Assembly (NCBI RefSeq): GCF_030684315.1
Contig: NC_081369.1
Coordinates: 10,144,035 to 10,208,034, forward strand
DNA from: Stegostoma tigrinum
Lineage: Eukaryota
Length of the DNA: 64,000 bases
Direction of reading: 5' to 3'
Positions 5,055 through 63,820 of this stretch are shown here, one piece after another; position 1 is the stretch's first letter; the number at the start of each line of letters is the position of its first letter. Both the position numbers and the translations under genes were made by a program. The notes beneath the pieces were generated by a model, which worked only from the letters and a program-made list of their open reading frames with translations, searched no databases and was not told the DNA's origin.

Positions 5055-5570
5055 CAGCTAAAATGAAGCTCAAACAGTCCTCATCAGCTCTGAAATAGTA
5101 AAATGGAGATGAGTATAATGATCAATTCAATGGTTCCTGCTAGAAACTTGGTGATCGAAGGATATTAAAGTAATGGTGGCATGAAAATCAGAAGTCCCAG
5201 GATAAATAGTTGCTTAAGTGAAGAGGAATCGCTTGGATGAAGGAGTTGGAGTACTGCCGCCTCAAACGGGACGAACCTACCGACAAAGGAGATTTTTCGA
5301 ACACCGTGCCCCTATGGTGACTGAAAACGAAACAAAATTGCTGTTCTGCTGGTGGAAATGTTTCAACAAGAAGTTAGGAGAGGACCACCAGCCTAACAAA
5401 CTCCCACAAAGAGTAACAACTATATCCCTAGCGCCGCATTAGTCATGTGATATGTTATGTCACAGTTCAGCATATTTATCTGAGACCCATATGCCCCACC
5501 CGACCCAAAACCACTCAGAATACTGACCTCGTTTACAGCGAGGAGCCAAATTTCTCTTCTCGTTTGCAAT
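5055..5570 (+). promoter_or_regulatory. Upstream/promoter region of IgSF pseudogene copy 1, paralogous to 36950-37519
   Basis: Colinear similarity with 36950-37519, including an identical GTGAAGAGGAATCGCTT (5218-5234 vs 37112-37128) and TTTGCAAT directly before the ATG. Confidence 0.6.
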
Positions 5571-5625
5571 ATGTCGGCGTGAGCAGCGGTTCTATTCATG
5601 GCTCTTCTAGTTATGCCTCTTGAAT
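5571..5625 (+). pseudogene. Copy 1 leader pseudo-exon
   Basis: ATG TCG GCG TGA GCA GCG GTT CTA TTC ATG GCT versus copy 2 ATG TTG CTG AGA GCA GCG GTT CTA TTC ATG GCT; stop at 5580-5582. Confidence 0.85.
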
Positions 5626-5818
5626 GTTCCCAAATGCCCTGTTCTCGTAAATTAGACTGTATTTCATATTTACTGCTACCACGCGTTACAAACTTAGATG
5701 CCCTGCTTCTCCAATCCGACGCGTGATTGTTCTTACATCTTGCTTGTATTACCTTTCTGTTGTTCTTCCTACCCTGGTGTCGACAACTGTTATTACTTTC
5801 TTACTTGCTTTCTTTTAA

Positions 5819-6126
5819 TGGTCACGAAAGTAACTTCGAGCAAAATAAATCAGTTTGCCAAACGATTAAAGGCGGCCAGAGGTGACAATGTTTCCACCTT
5901 CTGCACATTTCCCTTTTTGAAGATATTCCCGAAGTAACTTGGTCGAGACCCATTTGCGGAACATGTTCTGGGACCTGACAGCAAAAAGCGATTCATGCCC
6001 AGAAAGGAAGAGGCTTACTTCATGTTCTCAATGTCACTATTGCAAATTTCGGAATGTATTATTGTAAAATAAAACATAAGCAAACTCTCATTGGAGCTGG
6101 AAGTGGCTCGTTGCTGACAGTGTGCG
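5819..6126 (+). pseudogene. Copy 1 VJ-type Ig V pseudo-exon
   Basis: VTKVTSSKINQFAKRLKAARGDNVSTFCTFP /frameshifts/ ...LHVLNVTIANFGMYYCKIKHKQTLIGAGSGSLLTVC then G|GTAAGT. Acceptor reads AA instead of AG. Confidence 0.9.
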
Positions 6127-6464
6127 GTAAGTGATACTGCACAAGGGCAGAAAACTCTTCAGCTGCTTCGTGTGTTTTATGTGGCCTGCGATTTTATGAT
6201 TCGAGGAAAATCTACTGATAGCTTATTCGCTTCACACCATCAGGGGTATCTCTCCCCATTGATTTTGTTGTACAACGGGACTCGATTCCCTTTCCCACCT
6301 TTGCGCCATTTCCTAAGATAATTTCCACCACTCATTGTCATCATGACATTGCACTTTGAGGTTAATCTAATGAGTGCAGAAATGGTTGTCAATGCGTCAA
6401 CATAGTGAAACAGCATAGCTTTTTGAATTCTGGCGTGAAATGTATTTTTGGAATAAGAACAAGA

Positions 6465-6630
6465 AATGGGGATGCTAGAAATCTGTAACAAAAGTGGATA
6501 TTGCTGTAGAAACTCAGAAGGACTGGCAGCATCTCTGTGAGCTAAGGTTTAAAGTCCAGTAATCTTGCTTCAGAACGATTCTCAAGAACGGTCACAGAAC
6601 TCAAAATGTTAACTGTCTTTTCCCTTCACA
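6465..6630. mobile_element. Degenerate palindromic Penelope-terminus-derived short element
   Basis: Left arm ...AACTCAGAAGGACTGGCAGCATCT...CTTCAGAAC, followed by the start of an inverted arm. A further right-arm-like piece lies at ~8950-9030, beyond the Penelope insertion. Confidence 0.55.
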
Positions 6631-6639
6631 GACAGTCTC

Positions 6640-8913
6640 AAAATGTCCCCATCACCCCATTTTTACGACAGACATCCAGTCCCCATCGACCTGCATTCCC
6701 CATGCAGATGGCCTAAAGGCCCTCTGCTTCTTCCTGTCCCACAGGCCTGACTAGGCTCCCTCCACTGATACCCTCATCCGCTTATCCAAATTCGTTCTCA
6801 CCCTCAACAACTTCTCCTTTAATTCCTCTCACTTCATACAGATAAAGGGGGTGGCCATGGGTACCCACATGGGCCCAAGCTATGCCTGCCTCTTTGTAGG
6901 CTATGTGGAACAATCCCTGTTCCAAAGCTACATTGGCCCAGTTCCCCATCTTTTCCTCCATTACATCAATGACTCTTTCAGTGCTGCCTCATATTCCCAC
7001 GAGGAGCTCTAATAGCTCATCCACTTCACTAACACCTTCCACCCCAACCTTAAGTTTACATGGACCATCTCTGACACCTCTCCCTCCTTCTTGGACCTCT
7101 CTGTCTCCATCTGTGGCATCCACCTGGAAACCAACACCACCCACGCTGTCCAACTCCCCCAGAACTTCCAATTCCCTGGTCCCCAACACCTCATTTTTAC
7201 GATGGACGTCCAGTCCCTATTTACCTGCATTCCCCATACAGATGGCCTAAAGGCCCTCCACTTCTTCCCGTCCTGCAGGCCTGACCAGTCTCCCTCCACT
7301 GACACCCTTATCCGCTTAGCCGAACTCGTCCTCACCCTCAACAACTTCTCCTTTTATTCTTCCCACTTGCTACAATCAAAGGGGGTGACCATGGGTACCC
7401 GCATGGGCCCAAACTATGCCTGCTTCTTTGTAGGGTACGTGGAACAATCCCTCTTCCATTCCTAACAGGCCCTAAACCCCATCTCTTCCTCAATTACGTT
7501 GATGATTGTATTGGTGCCACCACTTCACCAAAACATTCCACCCCCAACCTTAAGTTCACCTGGACTATCTTTAACACCTCCCCCACCTTCCTGGATCTCT
7601 CAGCCTCCATCTCAGGCAACCACTGAGAAATCAATGTCCATTTCAAGCCCACCGACTCCCACAGCTACCTATAATACACCACTCCAACCCACCTTCCTGC
7701 AAACATTCCGTACCCTATTCTCAATTCCTTCATCTCTGCCACATCTGCTGCCAGGATGAGGCATTCCACTCCTCTACATCTCAGACGTCCTCGTTTTTCA
7801 AGGACCGCAACATCCCCCCACGGTGGTCGAGAACACCATCAACAGTGTCTCCCACATTTTCCACAACTCATCTCTCACACCCCGCCCCCACAATAACCAC
7901 CAAAAGATAATCCCCCTCATCCTCACGTACCACCCCACCAACCTCCGGATCCAACGCATCTTTCTCCGATACATCTGCCAACTGCAATCTGACACCACCA
8001 CCAAAGACATTTTTCCTTCCCCACCCTTGTCCTCTTTCTGGTGGGGCCACTCTCTCCATGACTCGTTTGTCCACTCCACACTCCCCTCCAACGCCACCAC
8101 ACTCAGCACTTTTCCCTGTAACCACAAGAAGTGCTGCACCTGCCCCCACACCTTCTCCCTCACCCCCATCCCAGGCCCCAAGAAGACAAGTTCACCTGCA
8201 CATCTGCTAATGTGGTATACTGCATCCGCTGTGCCTGTTGTGACCTCCTCTACATTGGGGAACCCAAGCGGAGGATTAGGGACCGCTTTGCAGAACACCT
8301 ATGTTCCGTTCGCAATGAACAGCTGCACCTCCCAGTCGCGAACCATTTCACCTCCAACTCCCCCAACCACCAACTCCTCGGATGACATGTCCATCCTGGG
8401 CCTCCTGCATTGCCACAATGACACTACCTGAAAGATGCAGGAACAGCATCTCATATTTTGCTTGGGAACCCTGCAGCCCAAGGGTATCAATGTGGACTTC
8501 ACAAGCTTCAAAATCTCCCCTCCCCCGACCACAACCCAAAACCAGCCCAGCTAGTCCCCACCTCCTTAACCATTCCCCCCATCTCAAGCCCCACCTCCAT
8601 CTCCGACGCACTAACTTCATCCAGCCTCCTTGACCTGTCCGTCCTCTCTGGACTGACCTATCCCCTCCCTAACTCCCCACCTACATTCACCTTCACTGGC
8701 ACTAACCCCGCCTCTTTGACCTGTCTGTCTCTTCCCACCCTATCTTCTCCTTTATCCATCTTCTATCCGCCTCCCCCTGTCTCCCTATTTATTTCATAAG
8801 TCCCTTCCCCTCCCCCATTTCCGAAGAAGGGTCTGGACCTGGAACGTCAAACATTCCTTCTCCTCTGATGCTGCTGGCCTGCTGTGGTCATCCAGCTCTT
8901 CATCTTGTTATCT
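6640..8913 (+). mobile_element. Penelope-like retroelement (RT + GIY-YIG endonuclease), decayed, with internally repeated RT segment
   Basis: RT motifs 'TMDVQSLFTCIP', 'GVTMGTRMGPNYACFFVGYVE' and YVDDCI (~7495); GIY-YIG 'NVVYCIRCACCDLLYIGEPKRRIRDRFAEH'; C-rich 3' region. The RT segment ~6690-7125 is repeated at ~7215-7625. Confidence 0.9.
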
Positions 8914-18296: not shown

Positions 18297-18527
18297 CATA
18301 AATATAGTTGCCGGAAAAGCCCAGCAGGTCTGGCAGCATCTGTGAAGAAGAAAACGGAGTAATGTTTCAGATCCATTGGCACTTCCTCAGAACAGTTCTG
18401 AGGAAGGGTCACCAGACCCGAAACGTTAACTCTGTTTTCTACTTCTCAGATGCTGCCAGACCTGCTGAGTTTCCCAGCAACTTTGTTTTTGTTCCTCATT
18501 TACAGCATCCGCAGTTCTTTTAGCTTT
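18297..18527. mobile_element. Palindromic Penelope-terminus-derived short element with target-site duplication
   Basis: Inverted arms centred on CTTCCTCAGAAC-A-GTTCTGAGGAAG (centre 18394). Flanked by TAAAC(G/A)TTTGATTAAA at 18281-18296 and 18528-18543. Confidence 0.8.
18394..18431 (+). ncRNA. Minimal type I hammerhead ribozyme motif
   Basis: AGTT CTGAGGA A GGGTC ACCA GACCC GAAAC GTT AACT: core CUGANGA and GAAA, 5-bp stem II, self-complementary AACGTT in place of stem III, 4-bp stem I (AGTT/AACT). Confidence 0.7.
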
Positions 18528-18694
18528 TAAACATTTGATTAAATATTGGCTTCACGAGCACTCTCAAAACTGGAATCAATGGCATTCAGAGGGGGAATAT
18601 TCTAGGAATTACCGTCATACACCGCACAAAGGATGATCATTGTGGTTGTTAGAAATCAATAAGCTCAGTCCAAGTCTAATACACCAGGATACTA

Positions 18695-28439: not shown

Positions 28440-31400
28440 ACATTTTGTATAATTTGGAAGGTGGTGGAAGAGTGACTGCGTTTGGTGGAAACGGTTATCA
28501 TGTGGCTTGTCAGGGTGTATAATTTTGTCAAGGTATTGATTTATTTCTTTTTTATATTATTTCGGGATTTTCGGCAGGAGTGATCGAGCGAGAGAGAGAG
28601 CACCAGGAAGCTGCCGGGAAGGTAGGTTTTCCCGCTTTAAAAAGCTTACCTCGAGCGGGAGCGGCCTTCGTTTATTTGGGCAGCTGCTGGTCAGACAGGT
28701 GGTGTGAGGTGCATTTGTTTTAATGCGGTAAGTGTACTCGATAAGGCAGATGAACTTAGGGCTTGGATCGGTACCTGGTAGTCGGATGTTATTGCTATTA
28801 CTGAGACGTGGTTGAGGGAATGGCATGATTGGCAACGAGGTCTCCCAGGATATCGATGCTTCAGGCGGGATAGAGAGGGGTGTAAAAGGGGTGGAGGAGT
28901 AGCATTACCGGTCTAATACGATATCACAGCAATACTGAAGGAGGGGACGATGGAGGACTCGAGCAGTGAGGCAATATGGGCAGAAATCAGTATCAGGAAC
29001 GGTGCTGTAACAATGATGGGGCTGTACTACACCAGGCCTCCCAACAGTGAGCGTGAGAGAGAGGTACAGATATGTAAACAGATAATAGAAAGGTGCATGA
29101 GTAACGGGGTGGAGGAGATGGAAGGTTTTAATTTTCCCAACATTGACTGGGATTCAATTAGTGTTAGGGGTCAAGATGGAGCAGAATTCGTAAGGAGCAT
29201 CCAGGGGTGTTTTCCAGAGCAGTATGTATGTAGTCCAACTCGGGAAGGGGCCATACTGGACCTGGTGTTCGGGAATGAGCACGGCCACTTGGTTGAAATT
29301 AAGTAGGGGACTACTTTGGAAATAGTGACCACAATTCCGTAAGTTTTACAATATTTTACAATACTCATGGACATAGATGAGAGTGGTCCTAAAGGAAGAG
29401 TTCTGAACTGAGGGAAGGTCAACGATACCAAAATTCAGCAGGATCCGGGCGATGTAGATTGGGAGAAACTGTTTGAAGGCAAATCCATATTTGGTATGTG
29501 GGAGTCTTTGAAAGACAGGTTGGTTAGTGTGCACGAGAGACGTGTTCCTGTGAAAATTAGGGATAGAAATGGCAAGATTAGGGAACCATGGCTGACAAGT
29601 GAAATTGTGTGACTAGCTCAGAGGAAAAAGGAAACATGCATAAGGTTTAGGCTACTGAAGACAGATGAAGCTTTGGAAGAATATCGGGAAGGTAGGGCGA
29701 ATCTGAAATGAGGAATTAAGAGGGCTAAAAAGGGGCATGCAATATCTTCAGCAAACATGGTTAAGGAAAATTCCAAAGCCTTTTATTCATATATAAAGAG
29801 CAAGAGGGTAACTAGGGAAAGAATTAGCCCACTTAAGGACAAAGAAGGAAAATTATGATTCAAGTCAGCGAAAATGGGTGACATTCTTAACAAGTACTTT
29901 GCATCAGTATTCACCAATGATAAGGAAATGACAGACGTTGAGGTTAGGGATAGGTGTTTCATTACTCTAGGTCAAGTCGGCATAAGGAAGCAGGAAGTAT
30001 TGGGTATCCTAAAAGACATTAAGGTGGACAAGTCCCCAGGTCCGAATGGGATCTATTTAGGCTATTGAGGGACATGAGAGAGGAAATATCTGGGGCCTTA
30101 ACAGATACCATTGCAGCATCATTAAACACAGGTTAGGCCCCGGAGGAGTGGAGAAATGTTAATGTTGGCCCCTTGTTTAAGAAGGGTTGCAGGGATAATC
30201 CAGGTAATTATCGACCGAAGAGCCTGACGTCAGTGGTATGGAAGCTGCTGGAGAAGATACTGAAGGATAGGATCTATTCCTATTTGGAAGAAAATGTGTT
30301 TTTCAGTTAAAGACAACGTGGTTTTGTGCAAGGGAGGTCATGTCTTACCAACTTAATAAAATTCTTTGAGGATGAGACATAGTTGATTGATGATGGAAAG
30401 GCTGTAGATGTCATATACATGGACTTCAGTGAGGCATTAAATAAGGTTCCCCATGGCAGCTAATGGAGAATGTGATTTTGCATGGCGTCCAGGATGTCCT
30501 AGCTAGATGAATAAAAAACTAGCTAGGAAACAGGAGACAGAGAGTAGTAGTGGAAGGGGGTTTCTCATATTGGAGACCTGCGACAAGTAGTGTTCCACGG
30601 GAATGTGTGCTGGGACCACAGTTGTTTGAGATATATGTAATTGAGTTAGACGAAGGTATAGGTGGTCTGACTAACAAGTTTTCAGATGACACGAAGATTG
30701 GTGGCGTAGCAGACAGTGAATCTGGAATGTCAGAGATCACAGCAAAACATAGATAGATTGGAGAGTTCGGCACATAGTGGTAGATGGAGTTCAATTCGGT
30801 CAAATGCAAGGTGATGCATTTCGGAAGATCTAATTCAAGAGCGAACTATACAGTAAATGGAAAAGTCCTGGGGAAAATTGATGCACAGAGAGATCTGGGT
30901 GTTCAGGTCCATTGTTTCCAGAACATGGCAACGCAGGTCAACAGAATGGTCAAGAAGGCATACGGCATGCTTTTCTTCATCAGACGGGGTATTGAGGACA
31001 AGAGCTGGCAGGTCATGTTGCAGTTGGATGAGACTTTTAGACTACTGCATACAGTTCTGGTTGCCATGTTACCAAGAGGATGTTGATGCTTTGGAGAGGG
31101 TGCAAAGGAGGTTCACCAGGATGTTGCCTGCTACAAGGGCGCAAGCGATGAAGAACGGTTGAGTAGATTAGCATTATTTTCATGAGAAAGAAGGAGATTG
31201 AGCGGGGACCTGATTGAGGTCTACAAAATCATGAGAGGTAGAGACAAGGTGGATAACAAGAAGCTTTTTCCCAGAGAGGCGGACTCAATTACTAGGGATC
31301 AAGAGTTCAAAGTGAGAGGAGGTAAGTTTATGGGAGATATGCATTGTCAGTTCCTTATGCAGAGGGCGTTGGGTGCCTGGACCGCGTTTCCAGCGGAGGT

Positions 31401-31590
31401 GGTAGATACAGTCACGATAGTGTCTTTTAAGATATATCTGGACAGGTACATGGATGGGCAGGGGGCAAAGTGATACAGACCCTTAGAAAATAGAAGATAG
31501 GTTTAGACAGAGGATCTCGATTGGCGGAGGCTTGGAGAGCCAAAGGGACTTTACCTGTGCTGTAATTTTCTTTGTTCTTTGTTCTTTATT
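28440..31590 (+). mobile_element. CR1 LINE ORF2 (APE-RT) with 3' tail, disrupted
   Basis: APE 'EAIWAEI..GLYY.RPPN..GFNFPNIDW..PTREGAILDLVF'; RT 'KVDKSPGPNGI', 'SSVPRECVLGP..KFSDDTK'; C-terminus 'GDLIEVYKIMRG'; tail (TTCTTTG)n at ~31567-31587. Confidence 0.9.
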
Positions 31591-36949: not shown

Positions 36950-37519
36950 GCAAACTAAAGCCCAAGCTGCCCTCATCAGCACTGACGTGGACAAATGGAG
37001 ATGAATATAATTATCAATCTAGTGGCTCTTGCTGGAAACTTTCGTGTTCGGCTGTCGTTAATGATGATGGTGGCATGAAACTCAGAGTTCTCAGAATAAA
37101 CACTTGCTTATGTGAAGAGGAATCGCTTAGGTAAAGGAGCTGGAATACTGTAGCCTGAAGCAATATTTTCAGTAGTAAGACAAGTAAAAGGAAGGTGTTG
37201 ACGGAAGAGATTTTTGGAATACAATGTCCGTGTGATGGCTGAGCAGAAAACAAAAACTTCTGATCTTCATTTGGAAATATTTCAGCAGGGAGTTTGCATG
37301 GGAACTGCGGATAACGAACTCCCACAGATTAGAACAAGCACATCCAATACGCCACATTTGTCACGTAATATCGCATATTGCAGTCTCATGTTTACTATTT
37401 CTACCTATGAAACTTATTTGCTCATCTCCCCACCCGCCCCACCCCTAACCACCACACAGCCACTGAGAATACCGCCTTCGCTTCTACCCAGGAGCCCACT
37501 CTTTTCGCTCATTTGCAAT
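36950..37519 (+). promoter_or_regulatory. Putative promoter/5'UTR of the intact IgSF gene
   Basis: Non-coding sequence conserved with 5055-5570; GAGGAA ETS-like core within 37112-37128; C-rich/ACCACA region at ~37430-37460. Confidence 0.55.
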
Positions 37520-37574
37520 ATGTTGCTGAGAGCAGCGGTTCTATTCATGGCTTTTCTGAATTTGGCTTGGCCAG
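37520..37574 (+). CDS. Exon 1: signal peptide
   Basis: MLLRAAVLFMAFLNLAWP, then G|GTACTC (phase 1). Confidence 0.85.
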
Positions 37575-40500
37575 GTACTCTTAAACCTTACGAACTGCCC
37601 CTTTGCAATAACTTAGAATCATTTTCAAATTTACAGCTTCTAAGTATTCAAAATTAGATGCCCTTATTCACCAATTCGATGCACGTCATTGTTCTCAATT
37701 GTTCTTGAATTTTATTCTTCCGGCTTTCTTTTCCATGTTTCTATCACAACTGGCATCATGGTCTTTGTTTTTTTTTTCCAGATGTCACTGAAGTAACATC
37801 GAACAAATTAGATCAGTTTCCCAACCTCTTGAAGGCGGCGAGAGGTGACAATGTTTCCATGTTCTGTACTTTTCCCATATTTGAAGATGTTCCTCAAGTA
37901 CTTTGGAAGAGACACAACGAGGAATCGTTTCTGCAACCAGACAACAGAAGACGTTTTCATGTCCAGAAAGGAAGGAGCTCACTTCATGTTCTCAATGTCA
38001 CTCTTTCAGACTCTGGAATGTATCATTGTAAAATAAAGCATCAGCAAACCATCCTGAGAGCAGAAAGTGGATCATTGCTGACAGTGTGCGGTAAGTGACA
38101 CTGCACCAGATGCAGGCAATTAATGCCATCTGAGCTTTTCTAATGAGAAGAAAATCCAATGATAGCGTATTCACTTCAGATTGTCGGGTAGACCTCGTCC
38201 CTGTTGGCCTCGCAATACGACGGTCATTGATTTGCTTTCGCTCGTTTGCGACATTTCTTCAGAAAAAAAAAATCCACTCATTATTATCATGATGTGGAGG
38301 TGCCGTTGTTGGACGATGGTTAGCAAGGTCAGAAATGACACGCACCAGGTGATAATCCAAAACACGGCTTTTGGAGCCTCAGTCTGAAGGACTGGGTCTT
38401 CGAAAGCTTGTGTCTTCAAATGAACCTGAATAACTATATAACCTGGTCTCGTATGATTTGTGACATTGTCATCATGACATAGTACTGGACGTTAATGTAA
38501 TGAGTGTCTTTTTGTTGCAGGAACTGTTGATATTTCACCAAAACATTGGAAAAAGGATAACTTTTGAAACCTTGGGATGTAGTTAATTCATGGAATAAGA
38601 TAAGATAGAGAACTGCAAATGCTTGAAATCCGAAACAAACATGGAAATTGCTAGAGAAAGTTAGGGTGTCTGTATCTGTGTGTGCTGGTGTATAAAGTCC
38701 AGCGAACCTTCTTCAGAATGGTTCTAAAGAAAAGCCATTGGACTCGAAACGTTAACTCATTTTCCCCTCCACGGATAGCCTCAAAATGAGAGGAAGCAGA
38801 TTTAGGACTGAGTTGAGGAAAAACCTCTTCACGCAAAGCATTGTGAATCTGTGGAATTCCCTGCCCAGTGAAGCAGTGTAGGCTACCTATATCGTTGAAT
38901 GTTTTAAAGCAAAGGTGGTAGATTTTTGAACAGAAAAGAAATCGGGGTTATGTTGAGCGGGCGGCTAAGTGGACGTGAGTCCACAAAAGGATAAACTATG
39001 ATCTTATTTATTGTCAGAGCAGGTTGGGCAGATCAGATGGCCGACTGCTGCAATTATTTCTTAGCTTGGAATGCTGCCAGACCTACCGAGTTTCTCCCGC
39101 AATTTCTGTCTTTGTGCCTTGGGGTAAATAGAACATAGAACATAGAACAGTACAGCACAGAACAGGCCCTTCAGCCCACAATGTTGTGCCGACCATTGAT
39201 CCTCATGGATGCACCCTCAAATTTCTGTGACCATATGCATGTCCAGCAGTCTCTTAAATGACCCCAATGACCTTGCTTCCACAACTGCTGCTGGCAACGC
39301 ATTCCATGCTCTCACAACTCTCTGCGTAAAGAACCTGCCTCTGACATCCCCTCTATACTTTCCACCAACCAGCTTAAAACTATGACCCCTCGTGCTAGCC
39401 ATTTCTGCCCTGGGAAATAGTCTCTGGCTATCAACTCTATCTATGCCTCTCATTATCTTGTATACCTCAATTAGGTCCCCTCTCCTCCTCCTTTTCTCCA
39501 ATGAAAAGAGACCGAGCTCAGTCAACCTCTCTTCATAAGATAAGCCCTCCAGTCCAGGCAGCATCCTGGTAAACCTCCTCTGAACCCTCTCCAAAGCATC
39601 CACATCTTTCCTATAATAGGGCGCCCAGAACTGGACGCAGTATTCCAAGTGCGGTCTAACCAAAGTTTTATAGAGCTGCAACAAGATCTCACGACTCTTA
39701 AACTCAATCCCCCTGTTAATGAAAGCCAAAACACCATGTGCTTTCTTAACAACCCTGTCCACTTGGGTGGCCATTTTAAGGGATCTATGTATCTGCACAC
39801 CAAGATCCCTCTGTTCCTCCACGCTGCCAAGAATCCTATCCTTAATCCTGTACTCAGCTTTCAAATTCGACCTTCCAAAATGCATCACCTCGCATTTATC
39901 CAGGTTGAACTCCATCTGCCACCTCTCAGCCCATCTCTGCATCCTGTCAATGTCCCGCTGCAGCCTACAACAGCCCTCTACACTGTCAACGACACCTCCG
40001 ACCTTTGTGTCGTCTGCAAACTTGCTGACCCATCCTTCAATTCCCTCGTCCAAGTCATTAATAAAAATTACAAACAGTAGAGGCCCAAGGACAGAGCCCT
40101 GTGGAACCCCACTCACCACTGACTTCCAGGCAGAATAATGATCGATTACCTCTCACCAAAATAATGGTGTTAAAAATGTGGCAATGGATAAGGTGTTAAT
40201 ACAAATGCAAGTTACTGTGGATATTTTGTAATTTGGAATGCTAGCAGAAATTAATTGGAATGTGTCTGAACATCGACAGATAGAATACGTGCATAACAAT
40301 TGTAAACAAGAGTGGCCATTCGTCCCGTCAGTTTATTCAGCTGCTCAGTAAAATTATGGTTGATCTGATTCTGTTATCAACTGCACTTTCCTGTGCGCCT
40401 TGATATCCTTGGACTTCATCAAAAACCAAGTGAAGTTTCAGGTCATAATCTTTCGTCAGAATATTTTTAATACCTCCTACATCAATTCATTGTATATGGT

Positions 40501-43500
40501 TATTTAGACCAACAAATCAGAAACTACAATATGCAATAACAAGGTTTAGAGCTGGATGAAAATAGCAGGCCAAGCTGCATTAGAGGAACAGGATAGTTTG
40601 GAGTCTAGACCTTTCTTCAGAAATCGTTCCTCCGGCATCTGCAGTTCCTACTATCTCAGCCACAATCTGCATTCTTTGTAAATTAGGGTGAATGATAATA
40701 TACCACAGCCATCAATTTCAATGAACACAAGATATCTTTTCCACCTCCAAATTGCCAAACAAAACATTCTGTAGCAAATCCTTCAAATTTCGAGATGGAT
40801 ATCAAGGAAAATTAATACGGCGTATCAATGGAATAGAATAAAACCGCACAAACGGATTTGAGGTATAGAGGGTGAATGGCGGACTAACTTGAAGGATAGT
40901 ACTTGCTTAGTGTTTTGGCTCCGCATTTTCCCAATTCCAACATGTTTGAAACGTCAATGTTTCTTTTTTAAACAAACGAATCACAATAGCCAATGAGATG
41001 GCAACTGTTAATCTTGCTCTCAGGTTTGGAATCCATTCCAAATCGTAAAACTTGCAGGGTTCCAAAGACACCCCTAGGCTCTGGTTGACGCCCTGCAGTT
41101 CGGCAACGGGATCGTCTCAGTTCTATGCACAGCAGGCAAAGTGAATGAAGGATAATGCCAAACATATCTAAAAACTTTTGTGCTCCTGTGTTTGTAATTT
41201 ATTATTTCGTTCCAATGGCACATACCACAGGAGGCCAAGATGATACCTTTTTCTCTCTCTCTCCACGAGTTTTCCGTGATATCTGTAGCAGTTCCATGGG
41301 GAACATAAAACATTTCTCAGCGTTTGCTGGCAATAACAGTTAGCACACATTTGGAAGTGAATCAAGTATCTAATTTTATCATTCCCTCTCATTAAAAATC
41401 CAGGAGCCATAAACATGCGGAGGTGTTAAGGTTGTTGATTGTAATACACATCAGAACATTGCAAACCCACTCGTATTCCCCCAGCTAAGCACTGACAGCA
41501 GATTAAGAGGGCACAAGCTCATTTTAGTAACTGGTAAATGTCATTCTACCTATGAATCTAATTTCTATAAATAAGTTCCATAGGTAGAATGGTGATACAG
41601 AGTACGTAACACCTGCACTTTATTGCAGATTTTCTTCCCAGGTTACTTCTTGTTGTGCATCATTTGCAAAATATCGTAACATTTTGCTATGCATTTCTTT
41701 AAAAATGAATGCAAAGACAACATTTAAAATACGATAGTAACGAAAACTGTTGTCACTTCAGAAATGGAACAGCTTTGGTGCGGCAGGGCGCGGATTAGAA
41801 AGTTTGAAAGAAGAGGCCATGAGAATCTGAAATTTGGGTGCAGGCACAAGATGGTTGCTGGTGCAAGTTGGCAACAAAATGGCTTCCAGCCTGGGAACTG
41901 TGAATTCTGCTAGACCTGCTCTTTTAGCCTGGGAACTTTGCATTCTGCTAGGGCTGCAGCATAAGTAATGTGGTAATGGTAAGATAATGCAGTACTAACC
42001 TTTCTAGCTGACCTTCGGTAGCAAATGTTATGGCGCTGTATGGCGAGACAAAAAGTAACCTAAGCATTGTGACATAATTTGTTTTCCAGTTAACACAATT
42101 GGATTATGTAACTGTCAATGAAGCAATATCATGTCTTGAATGGTAATTGTTTGAATACACTATGCGATCACACCATCTACCCTGCTTTAAGAAAAGTATA
42201 AAATGTCTTTGTATTAACCTATGATGTGCAGCTCCTCGAAGAAGTACGGAAGTGCTCAACTTCTGTGATTCTGGATGATCTGTACCCGGCCAGACTGCGA
42301 GTGTACATTGACCGATCGCGGAATTGAGAGACACCCCAGCGAGGGTCCAGATTTACAAATGTAACCTAAACTTTTTTAAAAATGTTTTACTTCCTGTTGT
42401 AGTTCCTCCGACCGTCCTGAAAATCATTCCCGTAGAAGAGATTTCAGGGAATTACTTGAAATTCAAGTGTACAGCGACTGCCTTTTGTCCGCAGGATTTA
42501 GGAATCTCCTGGTTAAGAGATGGTGTCAAAATTCAGGCCGGAATAGAAACTTTGAAAAACAAGACAGTGGATGGTCTTTATGAAGTTACTAGTTCGTTGG
42601 AAAATGAACCACCTATGCGGGACAGTGTAGTTTATACCTGTCTGGTATGTCATGCCTGTCTTAAGGTGCCCACCAGCGTCAGCTACACCTTTAAACGAGG
42701 TAAGATTGAAAATATACCCTGAGGGAGTTTGCTGTGTGAAGAAGGGTAAAATCCGAGATATGTATTCTTAAGCATTGAGCTATCTGTAACTCCAAAATAT
42801 CGTGTAAATGTGAATGGAGTTCATTCTCAGTGTCACAGAAATTGAAACAAAGTAAAATATTCTGAGATTTCTGGCAGATGTAGGTGGCCGACTAGTTCCC
42901 TGAAAAGACCTGAAACGGAAAGTTGATGTGAAAACTACTCAAAAGTTGAAAACTCGACAGTTTTATTTTGCGAAATGAAATGAATGCATGGCTAAAATTG
43001 ATCCATTTCACTCGAGTAATTTATGCAACTGAAAAAAAATGAAAGAACTGCGGATCCTGTAAATCAGGAAACAAAACAGAAATTGCTGGAAAAAGAACTC
43101 AGCAGGTCTGGCAGCATCTGAGAAGGAAAAAACAGGGAGTTAACGTTTCGTGTCCATTCACCCTTCCTCAGAACTTCCCAGAGTTCCAGGAAGGGTCACC
43201 GGACCCGAAATGTTAACTCTGTTTTATTTTTCTTTCACAGATGCTGCCAGATCTGATGAGTTTTTCCGGCCATTTCTCCTTTGTTATGCAACTTGTACCT
43301 GTGTATCGTTTATACCACTCAGCTGATCTCTGCCAACAGCACCTTAAGTTGCCTGTAATCTATATTTGAAAAATACTGGCCTCCCTGTCTCCTGTTGTGT
43401 CTTTCCCTCTTTAAGGTGCCCCTTGAACCTTATTTCTCTCTGTCTTAAGATTAACTTATGTTGAGTGGATAATGCTGTTTGAAGTCCCGCAGAATTTTTA

Positions 43501-46500
43501 ACTCGGTTAAAGACACAGTTTGGTTGCAGGTTGTGCTTGTTATATATAAGTGTTGCAGTTGGTGCTTTCCGGGAAGACTGGAGAAATGTGTCATAAAGCA
43601 CACACAATCCTTACAAATCTTGACAGTGTAAATGAGGAAAGTGTATTTCCGGTGGCAGATGGTCTAACTCCAGAGAACACAGGTTCAAAATAAGGGGCAG
43701 GCCAATTATGACTGAGAGGAAGAGCAACTTATTCATCCAGAATCTTTGGAATTCCCCATCGAGAATGCGGGGAAAACACAGTCACTAAGAGTATGAAATA
43801 TTGAGATCGACAGAGTTCCAAATGTTAAATGAAATGTAAATAGTGCGAGACAATAGCGCTGATGAAAAACAATCATGATCTGATTGAATGACAGAGTGTG
43901 ATCCACACTCTCACTGTCTATCCCTGCTCCTGTTGTTTATGTTCTTTTGTAACCGTCGTTAGGGGATGTACACTTTGCCAGATCTTGCATCTGTTTCACG
44001 TCAGTCTGGTTTAAGACAATGAGTAAATAAGAGCAAATTCCTTTACGCATAGCAAACAACGCTCCTATACAGAGAGAACTTTCCCACGCCTTTAAGTCAT
44101 GAAATGCATTTTCTCAATACAATGCATTATTGAGCAGAAGTTAATGTCTTCTGGTGCACGTTAAGGCCTTTGCACAGGTGTCTCCCCTGAAATTAAAGTG
44201 GTCCAAATTTTCCAACAGTGATGTTATCCTGGGTGATACCTTTGAATTTATCATCGTCTGCGTTATGTTCTGCGCAGGTGACTCACTGTGTTCCAAACTT
44301 ATTCAGTTCCATCAGGTGTTGATCCTGTAGGAGAATGTGTCACTGGCCGGATAATCATTGGATGTGCAGGAGGAGCATTGGCAATGATACTAATCATGAT
44401 CATCTTCAAGATACTCAAAGTGAAAGCATCGGCTGGTAAGAACCTTTCATATTTCGCTGTGTACTTTTTATTTCCTTAGACCAAGCGTAAAAGCACTAAG
44501 AGCAGGTGAGGTATCAAGGGCTATGGCTTTAAATTGTGGAGGTGAGAATCTAAGGTGGATATGAAATGTAACTATTTAACCTTCTCATTCGAACTGGACA
44601 GTTGGTTCGTTCACCTCCATGTTGCTCCAGTCGAAATTACAAGTGTTCTATATTATTGATCAGTGCAGATCCAAGTCCTAAAGAAGAAACTTTTGTTTTA
44701 GAAGCTAGATGTTGGAATTTGGCATTAATGTGGGTGTGTTCGAACTGACAACTAGAAATTCACATCCTCAGGTTTTATTTCCATTGTAATTTGTGATATA
44801 TGTGCGCCACCGACTTGCATTTTGCACTATCATACAGAGACTAACTCTGCATCATTGAGTGCTTTGCAACGTGAGCAGTGAATAGGCAAAACACAACATA
44901 CTACACTCAGTGCAGCTGAATACCGTCAAACTGATTTTCTGCGCTATGCGTATAAATTAAATGTTTCAAACAGCGAAGGCATGACATTGGATTTAGTGAT
45001 ACGTTGATTCTATCATTAACAGTGCATTACTTTGCTTTGTATTAGGCAACGGGAGCAATTCGATGGAAGTTGGTCAAAATGATGAACGGGTAGGGCGACA
45101 ATATTCTTTCAATTCCAAACAAAAATCAGAAAGCATGTGGGCACATAGAATGGATAGCAGTGAATTTTACATTCAGTCGAATTTACTTAAATTTCATGGA
45201 ATATGTAATTCTATCGCCCCGGATGAAACGCCTGCACCTCTGCCACCTCTATGAGATAATAAGGCGATTTGTTCCACTCAAGTGTTTTACCTGTATATCT
45301 CACTTTTCACGCCAATCCAATCCTCTTTTTGAAATTTCCTATCGAATCTCTTCCTGTCACTGTCTCTGTTGATGGGCAGCTCACTGCAATGGACTGCAGA
45401 GAGATACAAACAAAACTCTCCACAGATTATTTACTAATAATACCGACTGTGTGTCACCTGGATCTGAAACAACATATCCAGGAAAATATTTTCTCCTCAT
45501 TTTCTTCATCACAGACTCTCAACACGTTAAGCACTTAGTTAAACCTCCTTTTAATGTACTCGATCTAAGTAAAATCATAATTTCCGGAACATCATTGAAA
45601 TCCCTGAAAACTGGGACCCTTCCAGGAAATCTGTCATATCCTTTCGAACCTAGACATCTTCCTGACGTAATGCCGGGAGTGGGACACAATATCTCAGGTC
45701 TTTTGTGTGCTGGAATCTTTCGTTAGCAGTTATGGGAGCAGAGAGTATGAGTGGAGTGGGTTGAAATCGAAATCGAAATAGTGGCGGTGGAAGTGTTGGG
45801 GGAGATTTTTGCCAAAAATATAATAGTTGCTCGCCATTTAGAGGACGTACTTTTCCAGAAATGTAATGAGAACAGCCTAAGGCTTCGCTACCAGATTTCC
45901 TAATACATTACACTAACTATGGGATCGAAATCTCTTCTTCCGATTTGGTCAGAAATAGAAATCATGGGAGATATCAAACGGGCAGCGGGCGCTTCCATCA
46001 GTTTTAGACTGGAATTCCAAACAAAACTATCCGTATTTCATTTTATGGATTAGCACTAAGAATGATGGTCCTGAGCTGTCACTAAATAAACACACCTGGG
46101 GAGTGTGACCAACATCAAATTTACATTAAAAAGTACAGCGCCAAGAACAATCTGCTTTACACCTATCCTGTTGAATCCAGCACAAGGACAAATAACAAAC
46201 CAGACAGGCAAAGCACGTCACTGTCAATGGCCAAACAATGCTCTTATCTTCAATGTTGTTTGGTACTACACTAAAATGCAGGGAATTGAAAGATCTGCGG
46301 TTTAACCTACCAACTGTACTGGGACGGACCATCTCAGCCAAGGCAGACCATGTTCACCCTGGTTCCGAGGATTCTGAAATTCAGCAGTAGTGAGGTAAAG
46401 GAGATTGAAAAGTGTGACTTAAGGCCTCTCCTTGAGATAAGCAGATCAAAACGACTGTCAGGGCTCAGAAATGGAGCCTTGAAAGGGATGTTTCACAATA

Positions 46501-46964
46501 TCAGAAATCAAAACACATCTATCACGCTGGCATTTGATTCCTTTGCTGATTTAATTGATGTAATAACCTGCATTTTAAAATGCGCAATCCTGATATTCTA
46601 ATTTATTTCACAAGAAGTTTAAAGCAGAATACCAAGAATTTTTAGACAGGGCTGTAGTTTGTCGAGGAATCACAGATAGAAGACAGTACTAAAATCGGTT
46701 ACAATGTGAAGTTTGTAACTGATGAGAGGAAATTCCACCAAAGCCCTTTTAATAAAACCTTGACTGCCTGTTGCACTGACTTGACGATGGTCTAATGGGC
46801 GATGTTAAATTTTACATTTACAGAGCAAGAAAGGAAGCGGAGATAACAAACTGACTTATGCTGCTCTGCAAATTGCTGATTCCAAGAAATCATTCAAGCC
46901 CAAAACACAAGACAATTCGGCATTATATGCAGAAGTAAAGGCGACAAAGAAAGCGAGAAGCTGA
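37520..46964 (+). CDS. Non-rearranging VJ-C1 IgSF type I membrane receptor with cytoplasmic ITIMs (SIRP/NITR/PRARP-like architecture), 6 exons, ~321 aa
   Basis: Exons 37520-37574, 37782-38090, 42403-42699, 44316-44435, 45046-45089, 46824-46964. All introns are GT-AG with phases 1,1,1,1,0. The joined 966 nt is one open frame from ATG to TGA. Confidence 0.88.
37782..38090 (+). CDS. Exon 2: Ig V-set domain with germline-joined J-like G strand
   Basis: Long pyrimidine tract + CAG|. DVTEVTSNKLDQFPNLLKAARGDNVSMFCTFPIFEDVPQVLWKR...RRF...SSLHVLNVTLSDSGMYHCKIKHQQTILRAESGSLLTVC G|GTAAGT. Canonical C, W and DSGxYxC. Confidence 0.93.
38610..39115. mobile_element. Palindromic short element interrupted by a CR1 3' fragment (~38778-39062, +)
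   Basis: Centre CTTCTTCAGAATGGTTCTAAAGAAAAG. The right arm resumes at ~39070 (ATGCTGCCAGACCTACCGAG). Confidence 0.6.
39128..40135 (-). mobile_element. Young 5'-truncated CR1 LINE with uninterrupted 300-aa RT C-terminal frame, in intron 2
   Basis: ORF 39217-40119 'GVPQGSVLGPLLF..KFADDTK..RPHLEYCVQFW..RGDLIEVYK'. Tail (AACATAG)n on + at ~39128-39148. Confidence 0.93.
42403..42699 (+). CDS. Exon 3: Ig C1-set domain
   Basis: TTGTAG|. VPPTVLKII...LKFKCTATAFCPQDLGISWLRDG...NKTVDGLYEVTSSL...YTCLVCHACLKVPTSVSYTFKR G|GTAAGA. C1 motifs CxAxxFxP, WLRDG, DGxYxxxSxL and YxCxVxH. Confidence 0.92.
43031..43283. mobile_element. Palindromic Penelope-terminus-derived short element with 10-bp TSD
   Basis: Inverted arms around CTTCCTCAGAACTTCCCAGAGTTCC. 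TTATGCAACT at 43021-43030 and 43284-43293. Confidence 0.8.
43590..43950 (+). mobile_element. Old CR1 3' fragment
   Basis: Decayed CR1 3' ORF2/UTR ending CCTGCTCCTGTTGTTTATGTTC. Confidence 0.55.
44316..44435 (+). CDS. Exon 4: short stalk + transmembrane segment
   Basis: GVDPVGECVTGRIIIGCAGGALAMILIMIIFKILKVKASA G|GTAAGA. Alternative in-frame acceptors would start the exon at 44307 or 44331. Conservation of DPVG in copy 3 argues against 44331. Confidence 0.82.
45046..45089 (+). CDS. Exon 5: short cytoplasmic exon
   Basis: TTTGCTTTGTATTAG|GC AAC GGG AGC AAT TCG ATG GAA GTT GGT CAA AAT GAT GAA CGG|GTAGGG. The 44-nt length is shared by both paralogs. Confidence 0.8.
46824..46964 (+). CDS. Exon 6: ITIM-bearing cytoplasmic tail
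   Basis: TTTACAG|SKKGSGDNKLTYAALQIADSKKSFKPKTQDNSALYAEVKATKKARS*. LTYAAL is a canonical ITIM; ALYAEV is ITIM/ITSM-like. Confidence 0.87.
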   Translation, partial: SKKGSGDNKLTYAALQIADSKKSFKPKTQDNSALYAEVKATKKARS

Positions 46965-47109
46965 GGATCTAAATATATTTGGAAGGTGGGAAATATTAAT
47001 CGATGCAGGCTCAGAATATTTGGTTAAACGTCGTTGAAGCGTCGTACAACGTGCTCAAATGACTATTGGCATGCATTGCGTTCAGACCAAGAACGAATTA
47101 TCTGGAATA

Positions 47110-47320
47110 GGTCAACAGTTCTGGCAGCATCTGTGAAGAAAAAAGATCAGAGTTTCACTGAGTGACTCTTTCTCAAAACTAATTTCCTCAGTTCTGAGGA
47201 AGGGACCCGAAATGTTAACTCTGATAATTTCTTCACAGGTGCTGCCAGACCTGATGAGATTTTCCTTCAAATTCTGTTTTTGTTCCTGATTTACAGCATC
47301 GATAGTTCTTTCGGTTTTTT
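47110..47320. mobile_element. Palindromic Penelope-terminus-derived short element
   Basis: CTGGCAGCATCTGTGAAGAA arm and an inverted TTCTTCACAGGTGCTGCCAG arm, with GTTCTGAGGAAGGGACCCGAAATGTTAAC near the centre. Confidence 0.7.
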
Positions 47321-47349
47321 TCTGGGAATATAGTTATCTTTTATGAAAT

Positions 47350-57104: not shown

Positions 57105-57235
57105 CGCAAAGAACTGCGGATGCTGGAAACCAGAAACAAAAACAGAAATTGTTGGAAAAAGCTCAGCAGGTCAAGCAGCATCTGTGGAGAAAAAGCGAGT
57201 TAACGTTTCGGCCAGCCACCCTTCTTCAGAACTGA
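57105..57235 (-). mobile_element. Single-arm Penelope terminal repeat with hammerhead core
   Basis: Minus strand: AGTT CTGAAGA AGGGTGGCTGGCC GAAAC GTT AACT. Confidence 0.65.
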
Positions 57236-62602: not shown

Positions 62603-63697
62603 GTAAAGAAAAGAAAAAAACACCTATATTGATTGTAAATTATTAAAATACAAATATAACAATAAATGTATGAATATATTGGAGCTGATTCGGAGCAACT
62701 TCAGTCAATTGACACCTGGGATGATTGGATTGTCGTAGGAGGATAAGTTGGATGAGAGAGACTTCTTTCACTGGAGTTAGGATGAGAAAAAGATGACTTG
62801 ATTGCAATGTGTTGCAGATTGCAAACTTTAAACGATTTGTCAGGTGGACGTAAAAAGAATGCTTTCTCATGCGGATATATCCAGAAACATGGAATACAAT
62901 TAACCAATTGGATATTGTCCTTTATAGACAGAGAAAAAGAGGCCTTTTTTGAATCACAGAAGATTGTGCCAGTTTGGAATTCCCTGCAATAGAAGATGGT
63001 GGTGATGGCATGATTGAATATTCTAAAGGCAGAAATAATTAGGTTCTTGTTAGTTAAGTGGAATGAAAGGTTTATAGAGATAATTACGTATGTGGAATTC
63101 CAAACATTAATTGATCAACCATTATCTTATTGAATGATGGAGACGCTGAAGGGGCTGAAAGGTCCACTTGTGCTTTTAACTCATATGCATGCTTGTGTTA
63201 ATAATTCACTGAGGAATACCAGTGCCCTGCATTTCGAAGGTTTACAGCTCAATATGTAGTATATTAACATTGCAAACCCTGCCTTTGCTTTACCCATAAC
63301 AGAGCAGACATTTCCTCTTGTAGTATGGTGAATTGAAGTCTACTTTGTATTGCAAAATTACTTTGGAAAGACAATCTGGGAGTAAAGTGGAACAGTTTGG
63401 AGACTCTGATATCATTTCAAAATTAATACACTCGCGTTAGTAATGTTAGAAGTGGGAGGCCGGGTATAAAACGAGTAAAGAGTTCGAATGAGGAGATGAA
63501 ATAAATCCGGTTTATATTGACAAGTTAAACTGCTAATTATGTTATGCCATATGATAGCAATTCATTCTTTAAAGTTGTAGGAAAGTGGAAACTATTCCTT
63601 TATAGTTAATCACTATTCATCTGCTCTTAATGTCACCTAACAAGTATCATAGGACCCGGAAACTAAAAATATTCAGCGAAGTAGCCAAAGTTCTCAC

Positions 63698-63820
63698 CAG
63701 ATGATGCCTTTAACTCGATGCTCGTCCAAATGGTTATTAACTGTAAAATTACCAGCATGCTACCTGCCCATCTAGAGATGAGCAGATAATTGAGATCTTT
63801 ACCGACAGGATCAATAACAT
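63698..63820 (-). pseudogene. Copy 3 transmembrane exon
   Basis: Minus strand: VIDPVGKDLNYLLISRWAGSMLVILQLITIWTSIELKASS G|GTGAGA. Donor intact; acceptor appears to be AA. Confidence 0.8.

What the first reader, a model, noticed from the sequence alone, without database searches (positions are those of the whole stretch)
37520..46964. Intact germline VJ-C1-TM-ITIM receptor gene: antigen-receptor-like ectodomain with an inhibitory tail
Seen in sequence: six GT-AG exons join into one ~321-aa frame (leader, V, C1, TM, 44-nt cytoplasmic exon, ITIM exon). The terminal ITIM exon is not in the ORF track at all. The V exon runs through a J-like strand (AESGSLLTV; GAGSGSLLTV in the paralog) to a splice donor, and I found no RSS beside it. 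Established knowledge: C1 domains are restricted mainly to Ig, TCR, MHC, tapasin, SIRP and a few relatives, and non-rearranging VJ-C1 genes are discussed as relatives of the pre-RAG antigen-receptor ancestor. Inference: a probable shark inhibitory immune receptor with TCR/Ig-light-chain-like geometry, possibly an uncharacterised family.
Basis: partly seen in the sequence, partly recalled or inferred. Interest (0 to 1): 0.85.

Follow-up and report, generated by a model that had tools for sequence, protein, structure and literature searches.

The report
Shark SIRP-like V-C1 inhibitory receptor gene
This is an intact six-exon gene for a cell-surface immune receptor (a variable-like domain, a constant C1 domain, a membrane anchor and an inhibitory tail); it belongs to a large gene family found across sharks, rays and chimaeras that genome pipelines name only "SIRP-alpha-like" and that I could not find described in any paper.

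Summary
Six GT-AG exons (37520-46964, +) give an open 966-nt frame of 321 aa. In order they encode a leader, a short V-type domain whose G strand is J-like and runs into a splice donor, a C1-set domain, a TM segment, a 44-nt exon, and a tail with LTYAAL (ITIM) followed 23 residues later by ALYAEV. No RSS lies nearby.

Homologues support every exon, the start codon, the stop codon and the junction residues. The gene belongs to a multigene family in at least 15 cartilaginous fishes, carrying automatic RefSeq names (SIRP-alpha-like, NCR3LG1-like, tapasin-related-like, Ig-lambda-like). The family's C1 domains form one clade (support 0.999). Members carry ITIM tails, short tails with an Arg in the TM, or a third tail type, so this is a paired-receptor family that resembles SIRP in design.

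- The "paralog" (5108-6645) is a truncated pseudogene.
- The V domain has no C'' strand, like IgNAR V.
- This gene has lost the first Gly of the otherwise near-invariant GxG.

I found no RNA data, so expression is unproven. Synteny could not be examined. I rate it a new variant of a known kind, of moderate interest.

The parts
37520..37574 (+). Exon 1: start codon and 18 leader residues (MLLRAAVLFMAFLNLAWP) plus 1 nt. Donor is CAG|gtactc.
   Evidence: Its length and position match the leaders of homologues such as P0151.
37782..38090 (+). Exon 2: short V-type Ig domain in phase 1. Canonical Cys28, Trp41, D-x-G-x-Y-x-C82. Two N-glycosylation sites (NVS, NVT). Ends in the G strand and a GTAAGT donor.
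   Evidence: V-set 2.3e-10, I-set 1.2e-9. (AF2 pLDDT 90, strands A A' B C C' D E F G, no C''). (Foldseek best matches IgNAR V, TCR V-alpha, VL, CD79b). (55-62% identity to Scyliorhinus, Heterodontus and Heptranchias proteins).
38057..38086 (+). J-like G strand RAESGSLLTV inside exon 2. The family consensus is G-x-G-[ST]-x-L-x-V; here the first Gly is Glu.
   Evidence: position 94: Glu here, Gly in 54 of 55 relatives. No RSS nearby.
42403..42699 (+). Exon 3: C1-set Ig domain in phase 1. One NKT glycosylation site. Three extra cysteines (FCP for FYP; CLVCHAC for CLVSHxS).
   Evidence: (C1-set 2.8e-9). (AF2 pLDDT 84). (best folds MHC II beta2/alpha2, Fc, CL; TM-score 0.80-0.85). (inside the family clade, sister to Chiloscyllium P0002, support 0.975)..
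44316..44435 (+). Exon 4: stalk with a 5-residue insertion that contains a Cys (VDPVGEC), the TM helix (about 44351-44407, IIIGCAGGALAMILIMIIF) and a basic stop-transfer stretch.
   Evidence: (aligns to the TM exons of P0151/P0162/P0163, E about 1e-5).
45046..45089 (+). Exon 5: 44-nt cytoplasmic exon that shifts the phase from 1 to 0.
   Evidence: It encodes (G)NGSNSMEVGQNDER, the same length and G..S.E.GQ..E pattern as GSKKDSAEAGQAEEQ in Heterodontus P0151/P0162.
46824..46964 (+). Exon 6: cytoplasmic tail with the ITIM LTYAAL (46851-46868), a second tyrosine motif ALYAEV (46920-46937) 23 residues further on, and the TGA stop.
   Evidence: 61-67% identity to the C-termini of Heterodontus P0007/P0151/P0162/P0163, E down to 6e-15.
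5108..6645 (+). Truncated pseudogene copy of the 5' flank, leader, V exon and start of intron 2. The V remnant lies at 5821-6126.
   Evidence: 67% identity over 1.3 kb. (TGA at 5580-5582, donor deleted, acceptor lost). (frameshift and stop in V; no C1, TM or ITIM exons follow).
63696..63803 (-). Relic TM-type exon of another family member on the opposite strand. The acceptor AG is missing and the GT donor is kept.
   Evidence: 53% identity to the P0151 TM exon, E = 0.001. (sequence).

Best explanation
The locus is an intact, germline-encoded (non-rearranging) gene for a type I membrane receptor of an elasmobranch. It is one member of a clustered family that evolves by gene birth and death and is found throughout Chondrichthyes. 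I describe it as a V(J)-C1 paired-receptor family that is SIRP-like in design.

The ectodomain has two parts. The first is a compact V-type domain without a C'' strand; I infer it binds ligand through its BC, C'D and FG loops. The second is one C1-set domain that acts as a spacer and possibly as an association module.

The tail carries LTYAAL (a canonical ITIM) and ALYAEV, with 23 residues between the two tyrosines. The inferred mechanism is this: after ligand engagement and phosphorylation by a Src-family kinase, the two phosphotyrosines dock the tandem SH2 domains of SHP-1 or SHP-2, which damps activating signals in the same cell. Sister genes in other species have the same ectodomain with a short tail and an Arg in the TM. 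These are presumed to be activating partners that signal through an ITAM adaptor.

Shown: gene structure, domain types, family membership and motif presence. Inferred: expression, ligand binding, phosphatase recruitment and pairing with adaptors.
For: The frame is open across six GT-AG exons. The domains are V-type and C1-set by Pfam and by predicted fold.

Homologues from Heterodontus, Scyliorhinus, Heptranchias, Chiloscyllium, Mobula, Narcine and Callorhinchus align to every exon, including the start and the stop. The residues spanning the junctions (Val, Gly, Gly) are the ones found in the homologues. Heterodontus P0162 (324 aa) has the same six-part layout.

The family HMM separates family C1 domains (at least 95 bits) from all other C1 domains (at most 54 bits). 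The 77 family C1 domains form one clade with support 0.999, and the window's C1 sits inside it.

Tail types across the family are ITIM/ITSM tails, short tails with Arg in the TM, and a third type.

The V exon is 79% identical to the pseudogene copy, against 64-66% for the adjacent introns, and Ka/Ks is 0.48. That points to purifying selection on the intact copy.

The assembly of exons 3-6 is reproduced without any exonic difference by contigs from four DNA runs, all from one study that may be the assembly's own source.
Against: There is no transcript evidence. No RNA run holds the locus, and the four runs found are DNA.

This copy departs from family-conserved positions: Glu for the first Gly of GxG (Gly in 54 of 55 relatives), three extra cysteines in C1, and a stalk insertion with a further Cys. 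It also lies between a pseudogene and a relic exon. It could therefore be a silent or decaying copy.

The second tyrosine motif has Ala at position -2, so it is neither a canonical ITIM nor a canonical ITSM. The promoter and the poly(A) site are not defined; the first AATAAA on the + strand is 2.1 kb downstream of the stop.
Confidence: 0.7

Rival explanations
1. The copy looks intact but is functionally dead or dying. It would be a recent casualty of the turnover in this cluster that has not yet picked up a stop or frameshift.
For: Both neighbouring family remnants are pseudogenes. A near-invariant Gly of the J-like bulge is lost, conserved Tyr and Ser positions are replaced by Cys, and there is an odd stalk insertion. 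No RNA evidence exists.
Against: All 321 codons and ten splice sites are intact. Ka/Ks against the pseudogene copy is 0.48, with exon identity well above intron identity. All structural core residues are kept: both Cys pairs, the Trp residues, D-x-G-x-Y-x-C, F-x-P and C-x-V-x-H. Both domains fold with confidence.
Confidence: 0.2
2. It is simply the shark orthologue of SIRP-alpha (SHPS-1), so a member of a characterised family.
For: RefSeq names many relatives 'tyrosine-protein phosphatase non-receptor type substrate 1-like'. The ESM Atlas puts SIRP-alpha clusters nearest (0.96). The family profile matches SIRP-alpha d1-d2 at 1.8e-30. SIRP also has the V-C1 order, ITIM tails and activating partners with a charged TM residue (PMC2785349 and general knowledge).
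Against: There is one C1 exon, not two. The profile matches Ig light chains and UrIg2 about as well as SIRP. The family is a lineage-specifically expanded multigene set, not a single orthologue. A search with the cytoplasmic tail found only same-species relatives. The V domain lacks a C'' strand. Genuine tetrapod SIRPs scored too low to enter my C1 tree, so orthology was not properly tested.
Confidence: 0.07
3. It is a germline-joined antigen-receptor gene (a shark Ig light-chain or TCR-like cluster).
For: Cartilaginous fish do carry germline-joined Ig clusters (general knowledge). The V-J-C1 order and the best continuous PDB matches are to light chains.
Against: TM and ITIM exons are present and conserved. 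There is no RSS. The V domain is short, without a CDR2/C'' region. The C1 lies in a clade that excludes the Ig-type C1 domains among the best 150 database hits.
Confidence: 0.02

Closest known systems
SIRP family (SIRP-alpha/SHPS-1 with SIRP-beta and SIRP-gamma)
   Same: An N-terminal V-type domain with a J-like G strand is followed by C1-set domain(s), a TM segment and a tail with tyrosine motifs spaced for tandem SH2 phosphatases. Sister genes have short tails and a basic TM residue. SIRP has been discussed as a link to the antigen-receptor ancestor (PMC2785349). It is the nearest named family by ESM Atlas features and among the best PDB profile matches.
   Different: This gene has one C1 domain instead of two. 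Its V is compact and lacks C'' (C-C distance 54 residues; SIRP d1 is about 66 from my memory of the sequence). The family is an expansion specific to cartilaginous fish. There is no evidence for CD47 binding. Orthology and synteny were not established.
UrIg / UrIg2 (non-rearranging VJ-C1 genes of elasmobranchs; PMC12227049, PDB 9dmx)
   Same: It is germline-joined, with a VJ exon followed by C1-type exons. It occurs in elasmobranchs. It has a split leader. It bears on the pre-RAG receptor question. UrIg2 is among the top PDB hits of the C1 exon and of the family profile.
   Different: By the paper, UrIg and UrIg2 carry several C domains each (nurse shark UrIg2 has nine), and the paper text has no mention of an ITIM. 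The window gene has a single C1 plus an ITIM tail. In the C1 tree the family clade excludes the domains of the 10-C1 white-shark protein P0001, which I take to be UrIg2-like. In white shark and Hemitrygon, family members and these multi-C1 proteins sit on sequences of different length.
PRARP (chicken non-rearranging VJ genes; Fu et al. 2019, J Immunol; paper not held, described from memory)
   Same: It is a non-rearranging VJ-type exon with an ITIM-bearing tail, proposed as a remnant of the antigen-receptor precursor.
   Different: As I recall, PRARP has a single V domain and no C1. No sequence was available to compare here.
Ig light chains / TCR chains
   Same: They share the V-J-C1 linear order and the C1 fold. 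Light chains are the best continuous V+C1 sequence matches.
   Different: The window gene has no RSS and no separate J segment. It has an ITIM tail and a V without C''. There is no evidence that it forms dimers.
IgNAR V domain
   Same: It is the best fold match of the V exon model (TM-score 0.78; both lack a C'' strand).
   Different: Sequence identity is 18-23%, which is at generic V-domain level. IgNAR V is assembled by rearrangement and is followed by IgNAR C domains.

Membership tests
Chondrichthyan V(J)-C1 receptor family (RefSeq 'SIRP-alpha-like', 'NCR3LG1-like', 'tapasin-related-like') | Domain and exon order: leader / V / C1 / TM / cytoplasmic exons | tested here: met
   Heterodontus P0162 has the same six-part layout.
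Chondrichthyan V(J)-C1 receptor family (RefSeq 'SIRP-alpha-like', 'NCR3LG1-like', 'tapasin-related-like') | The C1 domain falls inside the family clade, apart from other C1 domains | tested here: met
   The clade has 77 tips and support 0.999. The window's C1 is sister to Chiloscyllium P0002 (0.975). Family HMM scores are at least 95 bits against at most 54 bits for other C1 domains.
Chondrichthyan V(J)-C1 receptor family (RefSeq 'SIRP-alpha-like', 'NCR3LG1-like', 'tapasin-related-like') | Conserved last exon (..NKLTYAALQLADSKK..AVYAEV..) | tested here: met
   61-67% identity to Heterodontus C-termini.
Chondrichthyan V(J)-C1 receptor family (RefSeq 'SIRP-alpha-like', 'NCR3LG1-like', 'tapasin-related-like') | J-like motif G-x-G-[ST]-x-L-x-V | tested here: inconclusive
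   The window has E-S-G-S-L-L-T-V. The first Gly, present in 54 of 55 relatives, is replaced; the rest is kept.
SIRP | V-set d1 followed by two C1-set domains | tested here: not met
   Only one C1 exon lies between the V and TM exons.
SIRP | Cytoplasmic ITIMs that recruit SHP-1/SHP-2 | tested here: inconclusive
   The motifs LTYAAL and ALYAEV are present. Binding cannot be tested with these tools. A search with the tail found no SIRP.
SIRP | Orthology shown by phylogeny or synteny, and CD47 binding | not tested
No genuine SIRP sequences were in hand. The PDB profile match to SIRP-alpha is no better than to Ig light chains or UrIg2.
Rearranging antigen receptors (IgL, TCR) | RSS-flanked V and separate J segments | tested here: not met
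   No heptamer/nonamer in 37400-38400. The G strand is encoded inside the V exon.
UrIg / UrIg2 | A VJ domain followed by several C domains | tested here: not met
   There is a single C1 exon. The family C1 clade excludes the UrIg2-like P0001 domains. The architecture is described in PMC12227049.
PRARP | Single VJ domain, TM and ITIM, without C1 (from memory of Fu et al. 2019) | not testable with these tools
   The paper is not held and there is no reference sequence. The presence of a C1 exon argues against membership.

The most novel reading that the evidence does not exclude
The family is not a derived SIRP. It would be a surviving lineage of the non-rearranging V(J)-C1 stock from which antigen receptors arose. 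It is present in all three chondrichthyan lineages, has a compact IgNAR-like V domain, and is already organised as inhibitory/activating pairs. That would mean the pre-RAG ancestor was a paired innate receptor of this type. The family would then be a tractable outgroup for dating the RAG insertion and for tracing where the C''-less IgNAR V fold came from.
Probability: 0.12. Interest if true: 0.85.

Novelty: new variant of a known kind. Interest (0 to 1): 0.55.

Why it matters
C1-set domains are almost confined to antigen receptors, MHC and a few associates. Non-rearranging V(J)-C1 genes are the main living evidence for what the receptor looked like before the RAG transposon split its V exon.

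This locus shows that cartilaginous fish carry a whole family of such genes: expanded, with paired inhibitory and presumably activating members, and distinct from the recently described UrIg/UrIg2. Public genomes list its members only under misleading automatic names.

Describing it properly (phylogeny against SIRP, PRARP, NKp30 and Ig/TCR; chromosomal linkage; expressing cell types; ligands) would add a data point at the base of the jawed vertebrates. It would also give shark immunology a candidate counterpart to SIRP/KIR-type checkpoint receptors.

Tried and rejected
1. **RNA evidence.** The look-up of sequencing runs (kind rna) returned only four runs from one study, none on record as RNA. 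Laid on 42350-47000, they are genomic contigs with even depth across introns and no splice joints. This says nothing about expression.

2. **Synteny.** The supplements of PMC10751288 do not list these genes. The only indirect hint comes from chromosome sizes.

3. **Homodimer test.** I ran the Heterodontus ectodomain (P0151 residues 21-219, two copies). The result was 'no answer', score 0.00. This is not evidence either way.

4. **Cytoplasmic tail search.** P0151 residues 250-380 found only same-species proteins and no SIRP tails.

5. **Profile search for relatives outside cartilaginous fish.** The word-indexed search with alignment A2 gave only cartilaginous-fish proteins plus one spurious teleost hit. 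The word filter limits its reach, so absence is not shown.

6. **Literature.** Searches for PRARP, VJ-C1, SIRP with shark, and ITIM with cartilaginous fish found no description of this family. Fu et al. 2019 and Flajnik et al. 2023 are not held.

7. **Rfam.** A scan of the whole window at gathering thresholds gave no hits.

8. **Extra cytoplasmic ITIM exons.** Heterodontus isoforms have them, so I looked in introns 4-5. None was found.

9. **Joined model left out.** All searches and folds were exon by exon, by reference.
Full report
**The observation.**
- 37520-37574 (leader)
- 37782-38090 (V)
- 42403-42699 (C1)
- 44316-44435 (stalk and TM)
- 45046-45089 (44 nt)
- 46824-46964 (tail and TGA)

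Each is open in the required frame. Every intron begins with GT and ends with AG after a pyrimidine tract. The lengths add up to 966 nt, which is 321 codons plus the stop. The codons split across junctions read Asp, Val, Gly and Gly.

Pfam assigns exon 2 to V-set (2.3e-10) and almost equally to I-set (1.2e-9). It assigns exon 3 to C1-set (2.8e-9). The V exon runs through RAESGSLLTV-C straight into GTAAGT. A tolerant heptamer-spacer-nonamer scan of 37400-38400 found nothing on either strand.

Everything was done exon by exon, by reference.

**Support from homologues.** I ran an exhaustive HMMER search with the C1 exon against 1.84 billion representative proteins. It gave 117 hits below 1e-10. 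Among them were many single-domain hits of 35-63% identity whose C1 sits at about residues 122-218, as expected behind a leader and one V domain.

All the ones I looked up come from cartilaginous fishes: Heterodontus, Scyliorhinus canicula and S. torazame, Chiloscyllium, Hemiscyllium, Stegostoma, Heptranchias, Mustelus, Carcharodon, Pristiophorus, Mobula, Narcine, Hypanus, Hemitrygon, Pristis, Amblyraja and the chimaera Callorhinchus. There are usually several genes on one chromosome.

Their names are automatic and inconsistent: 'tyrosine-protein phosphatase non-receptor type substrate 1-like', 'NCR3 ligand 1-like', 'tapasin-related protein-like', 'Ig lambda-1 light chain-like' and 'TCR beta chain-like'.

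Aligned back to the window, these proteins cover leader+V (E = 1e-38), C1 (1e-32), TM (1e-5) and the last exon (1e-13). Their first Met and their C-termini coincide with those of the window gene. They have Val, Gly and Gly at the three junctions. The 15-residue stretch of exon 5 has a counterpart of the same length. Heterodontus P0162 (324 aa) has the same six-part layout. The gene model is therefore supported from start to stop without transcript data.

**The domains.** I folded the V exon with 55 relatives as its alignment and got pLDDT 90. The strands are A, A', B, C, a vestigial C', D, E, F and G, with no C''. The two cysteines are only 54 residues apart.

The best Foldseek matches are IgNAR V domains, TCR V-alpha, VL, CD79b and BTLA, with TM-scores of 0.73-0.80. 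Plain sequence search prefers I-set domains of contactins and titin. It is best described as a compact V(J) domain.

The family consensus for the G strand is G-N-G-T-G-S-x-L-x-V, a true J-type motif. In the window gene the first Gly of G-x-G is Glu, where 54 of 55 relatives have Gly.

The C1 exon folds at pLDDT 84. It matches MHC class II beta2/alpha2, Fc and CL domains at TM-scores of 0.80-0.85. All C1 hallmarks are present: C..F.P...W, Y.C.V.H..L. Three conserved Tyr/Ser/Thr positions are Cys here.

**The family.** A family HMM scores its own C1 domains at 95 bits or more. All 414 other C1 domains from the best 150 database hits score 54 bits or less; these come from Ig heavy chains, multi-C1 proteins of sharks and bony fish, and MHC.

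In a FastTree analysis the 77 family domains form one clade with support 0.999. Its sister group is unresolved (0.31). The window's C1 pairs with a Chiloscyllium punctatum fragment (0.975) inside a shark/ray subclade (0.985).

There are three classes of tail:
- long tails with one to three ITIMs, often with T-V-Y-A-Q-T motifs as well;
- short tails with an Arg in the TM, often followed by IIVDH;
- a WWIYLC...CCKC type without ITIMs.

The closest V relatives of the window gene in Scyliorhinus and Heptranchias are of the Arg-TM type, while those in Heterodontus are of the ITIM type. The same ectodomain is thus used with opposite signalling ends, which is the signature of a paired-receptor family.

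**The neighbourhood.** The 'paralog' at 5108-6645 is a 1.5-kb duplicate of the 5' flank, leader, V exon and start of intron 2. It has TGA at its fourth codon, a 12-bp deletion over the exon-1 donor, no acceptor AG, and frameshifts plus a stop in V. No downstream exons follow it.

A relic TM-type exon of a further member lies on the minus strand at 63696-63803. Its acceptor is missing.

Introns 2 and 3 hold a LINE reverse-transcriptase fragment and a very abundant short repeat. The picture is a cluster in which copies are gained and lost.

**Is this copy alive?** In favour:
- All codons and splice sites are intact.
- Core residues are kept.
- The V exon is 79% identical to the pseudogene copy, against 64-66% for the flanking introns, and Ka/Ks is 0.48. 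That fits one constrained lineage and one neutral lineage.

Against:
- The lost J-motif glycine.
- Three extra cysteines in C1, plus one at the end of the V exon and one in a 5-residue stalk insertion.
- The decayed neighbours.

There is no RNA evidence either way. The only public runs that hold the locus are DNA. They reproduce exons 3-6 with no exonic difference and a single intronic difference at 46658. I put a functional gene at about 0.7 and a silent or decaying copy at about 0.2.

**Mechanism.** By architecture and motifs this is an inhibitory receptor. The V domain would engage a ligand. LTYAAL and ALYAEV have tyrosines 23 residues apart; from general knowledge, that is the spacing of the bidentate SHP-1/SHP-2 sites in SIRP-alpha, PECAM-1 and PD-1. 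Once phosphorylated, they would recruit a tandem-SH2 phosphatase. All of this is inferred from sequence.

A homodimer prediction on the Heterodontus ectodomain gave no answer. Whether the extra cysteines mediate disulphide-linked dimers is open.

**Comparison with known families.** The family profile matches several families about equally well:
- Ig light chains, continuously over V+C1 (about 85-92 bits);
- SIRP-alpha d1-d2 (109 bits over two stretches);
- UrIg2 (117 bits over three stretches).

ESM Atlas features put SIRP-alpha clusters nearest, at 0.96. SIRP is the closest known design: V, then C1, ITIM tails, activating partners with a charged TM residue, and an argued link to antigen-receptor origins (PMC2785349).

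Membership of SIRP is not shown. There is one C1 rather than two, the V is different and compact, the expansions are lineage-specific, the tail search found no SIRP, and orthology is untested.

The gene is not UrIg or UrIg2, which carry several C domains each (nine in nurse shark UrIg2) and for which the paper mentions no ITIM (PMC12227049). It is not a rearranging or germline-joined Ig/TCR gene, because it has no RSS and does have TM and ITIM exons.

It is also not on the 20.4-Mb sequence carrying the UrIg2-like protein. This is an inference, not a mapping.

I found no paper that describes the family, but key subscription papers were not readable. I class it as a new variant of a known kind (SIRP-like paired V-C1 receptors) and score interest at 0.55.

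Noticed in passing
window 43031-43285 (intron 3); similar copies at 18310-18528, 47104-47322, 57108-57236 and 58871-58970: A short interspersed repeat of about 230-250 bp with an internal inverted structure. Contig depth over it in the DNA runs is about 10,000 times that of the flanks, and copies are 72-81% identical. Rfam at gathering thresholds finds no hammerhead or any other family in the window.
   Followed up: partly
window 39217-40119 (-), 22559-23173 (-), 30784-31473 (+): LINE-type reverse-transcriptase fragments. For the first two, RVT_1 scores 8e-13 and 3e-19. The first lies inside intron 2 of the receptor gene and is 67% identical to the copy at 30586-31453.
   Followed up: partly
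window 63696-63803 (-): A relic TM-type exon of another family member. It is 53% identical to the Heterodontus TM exon. It has Ser-Arg-Trp where the relatives have Phe-Gly-Cys, and it lacks the acceptor AG. Any V and C1 exons belonging to it would lie beyond the window's end.
   Followed up: partly
proteins P0002 and P0156 (Chiloscyllium punctatum GCC26426.1 and GCC26424.1): Two different subtypes of the family have GenBank accessions only two apart in the C. punctatum draft. One is the window gene's closest C1 relative; the other is of the WWIYLC/CCKC tail type. This suggests the subtypes lie side by side in one cluster. I did not check it on the DNA.
   Followed up: no
window 46658: All four public DNA runs read G where the window has T. 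The site is intronic, 166 nt upstream of exon 6. It is either a polymorphism or an assembly error and has no effect on the gene model.
   Followed up: no
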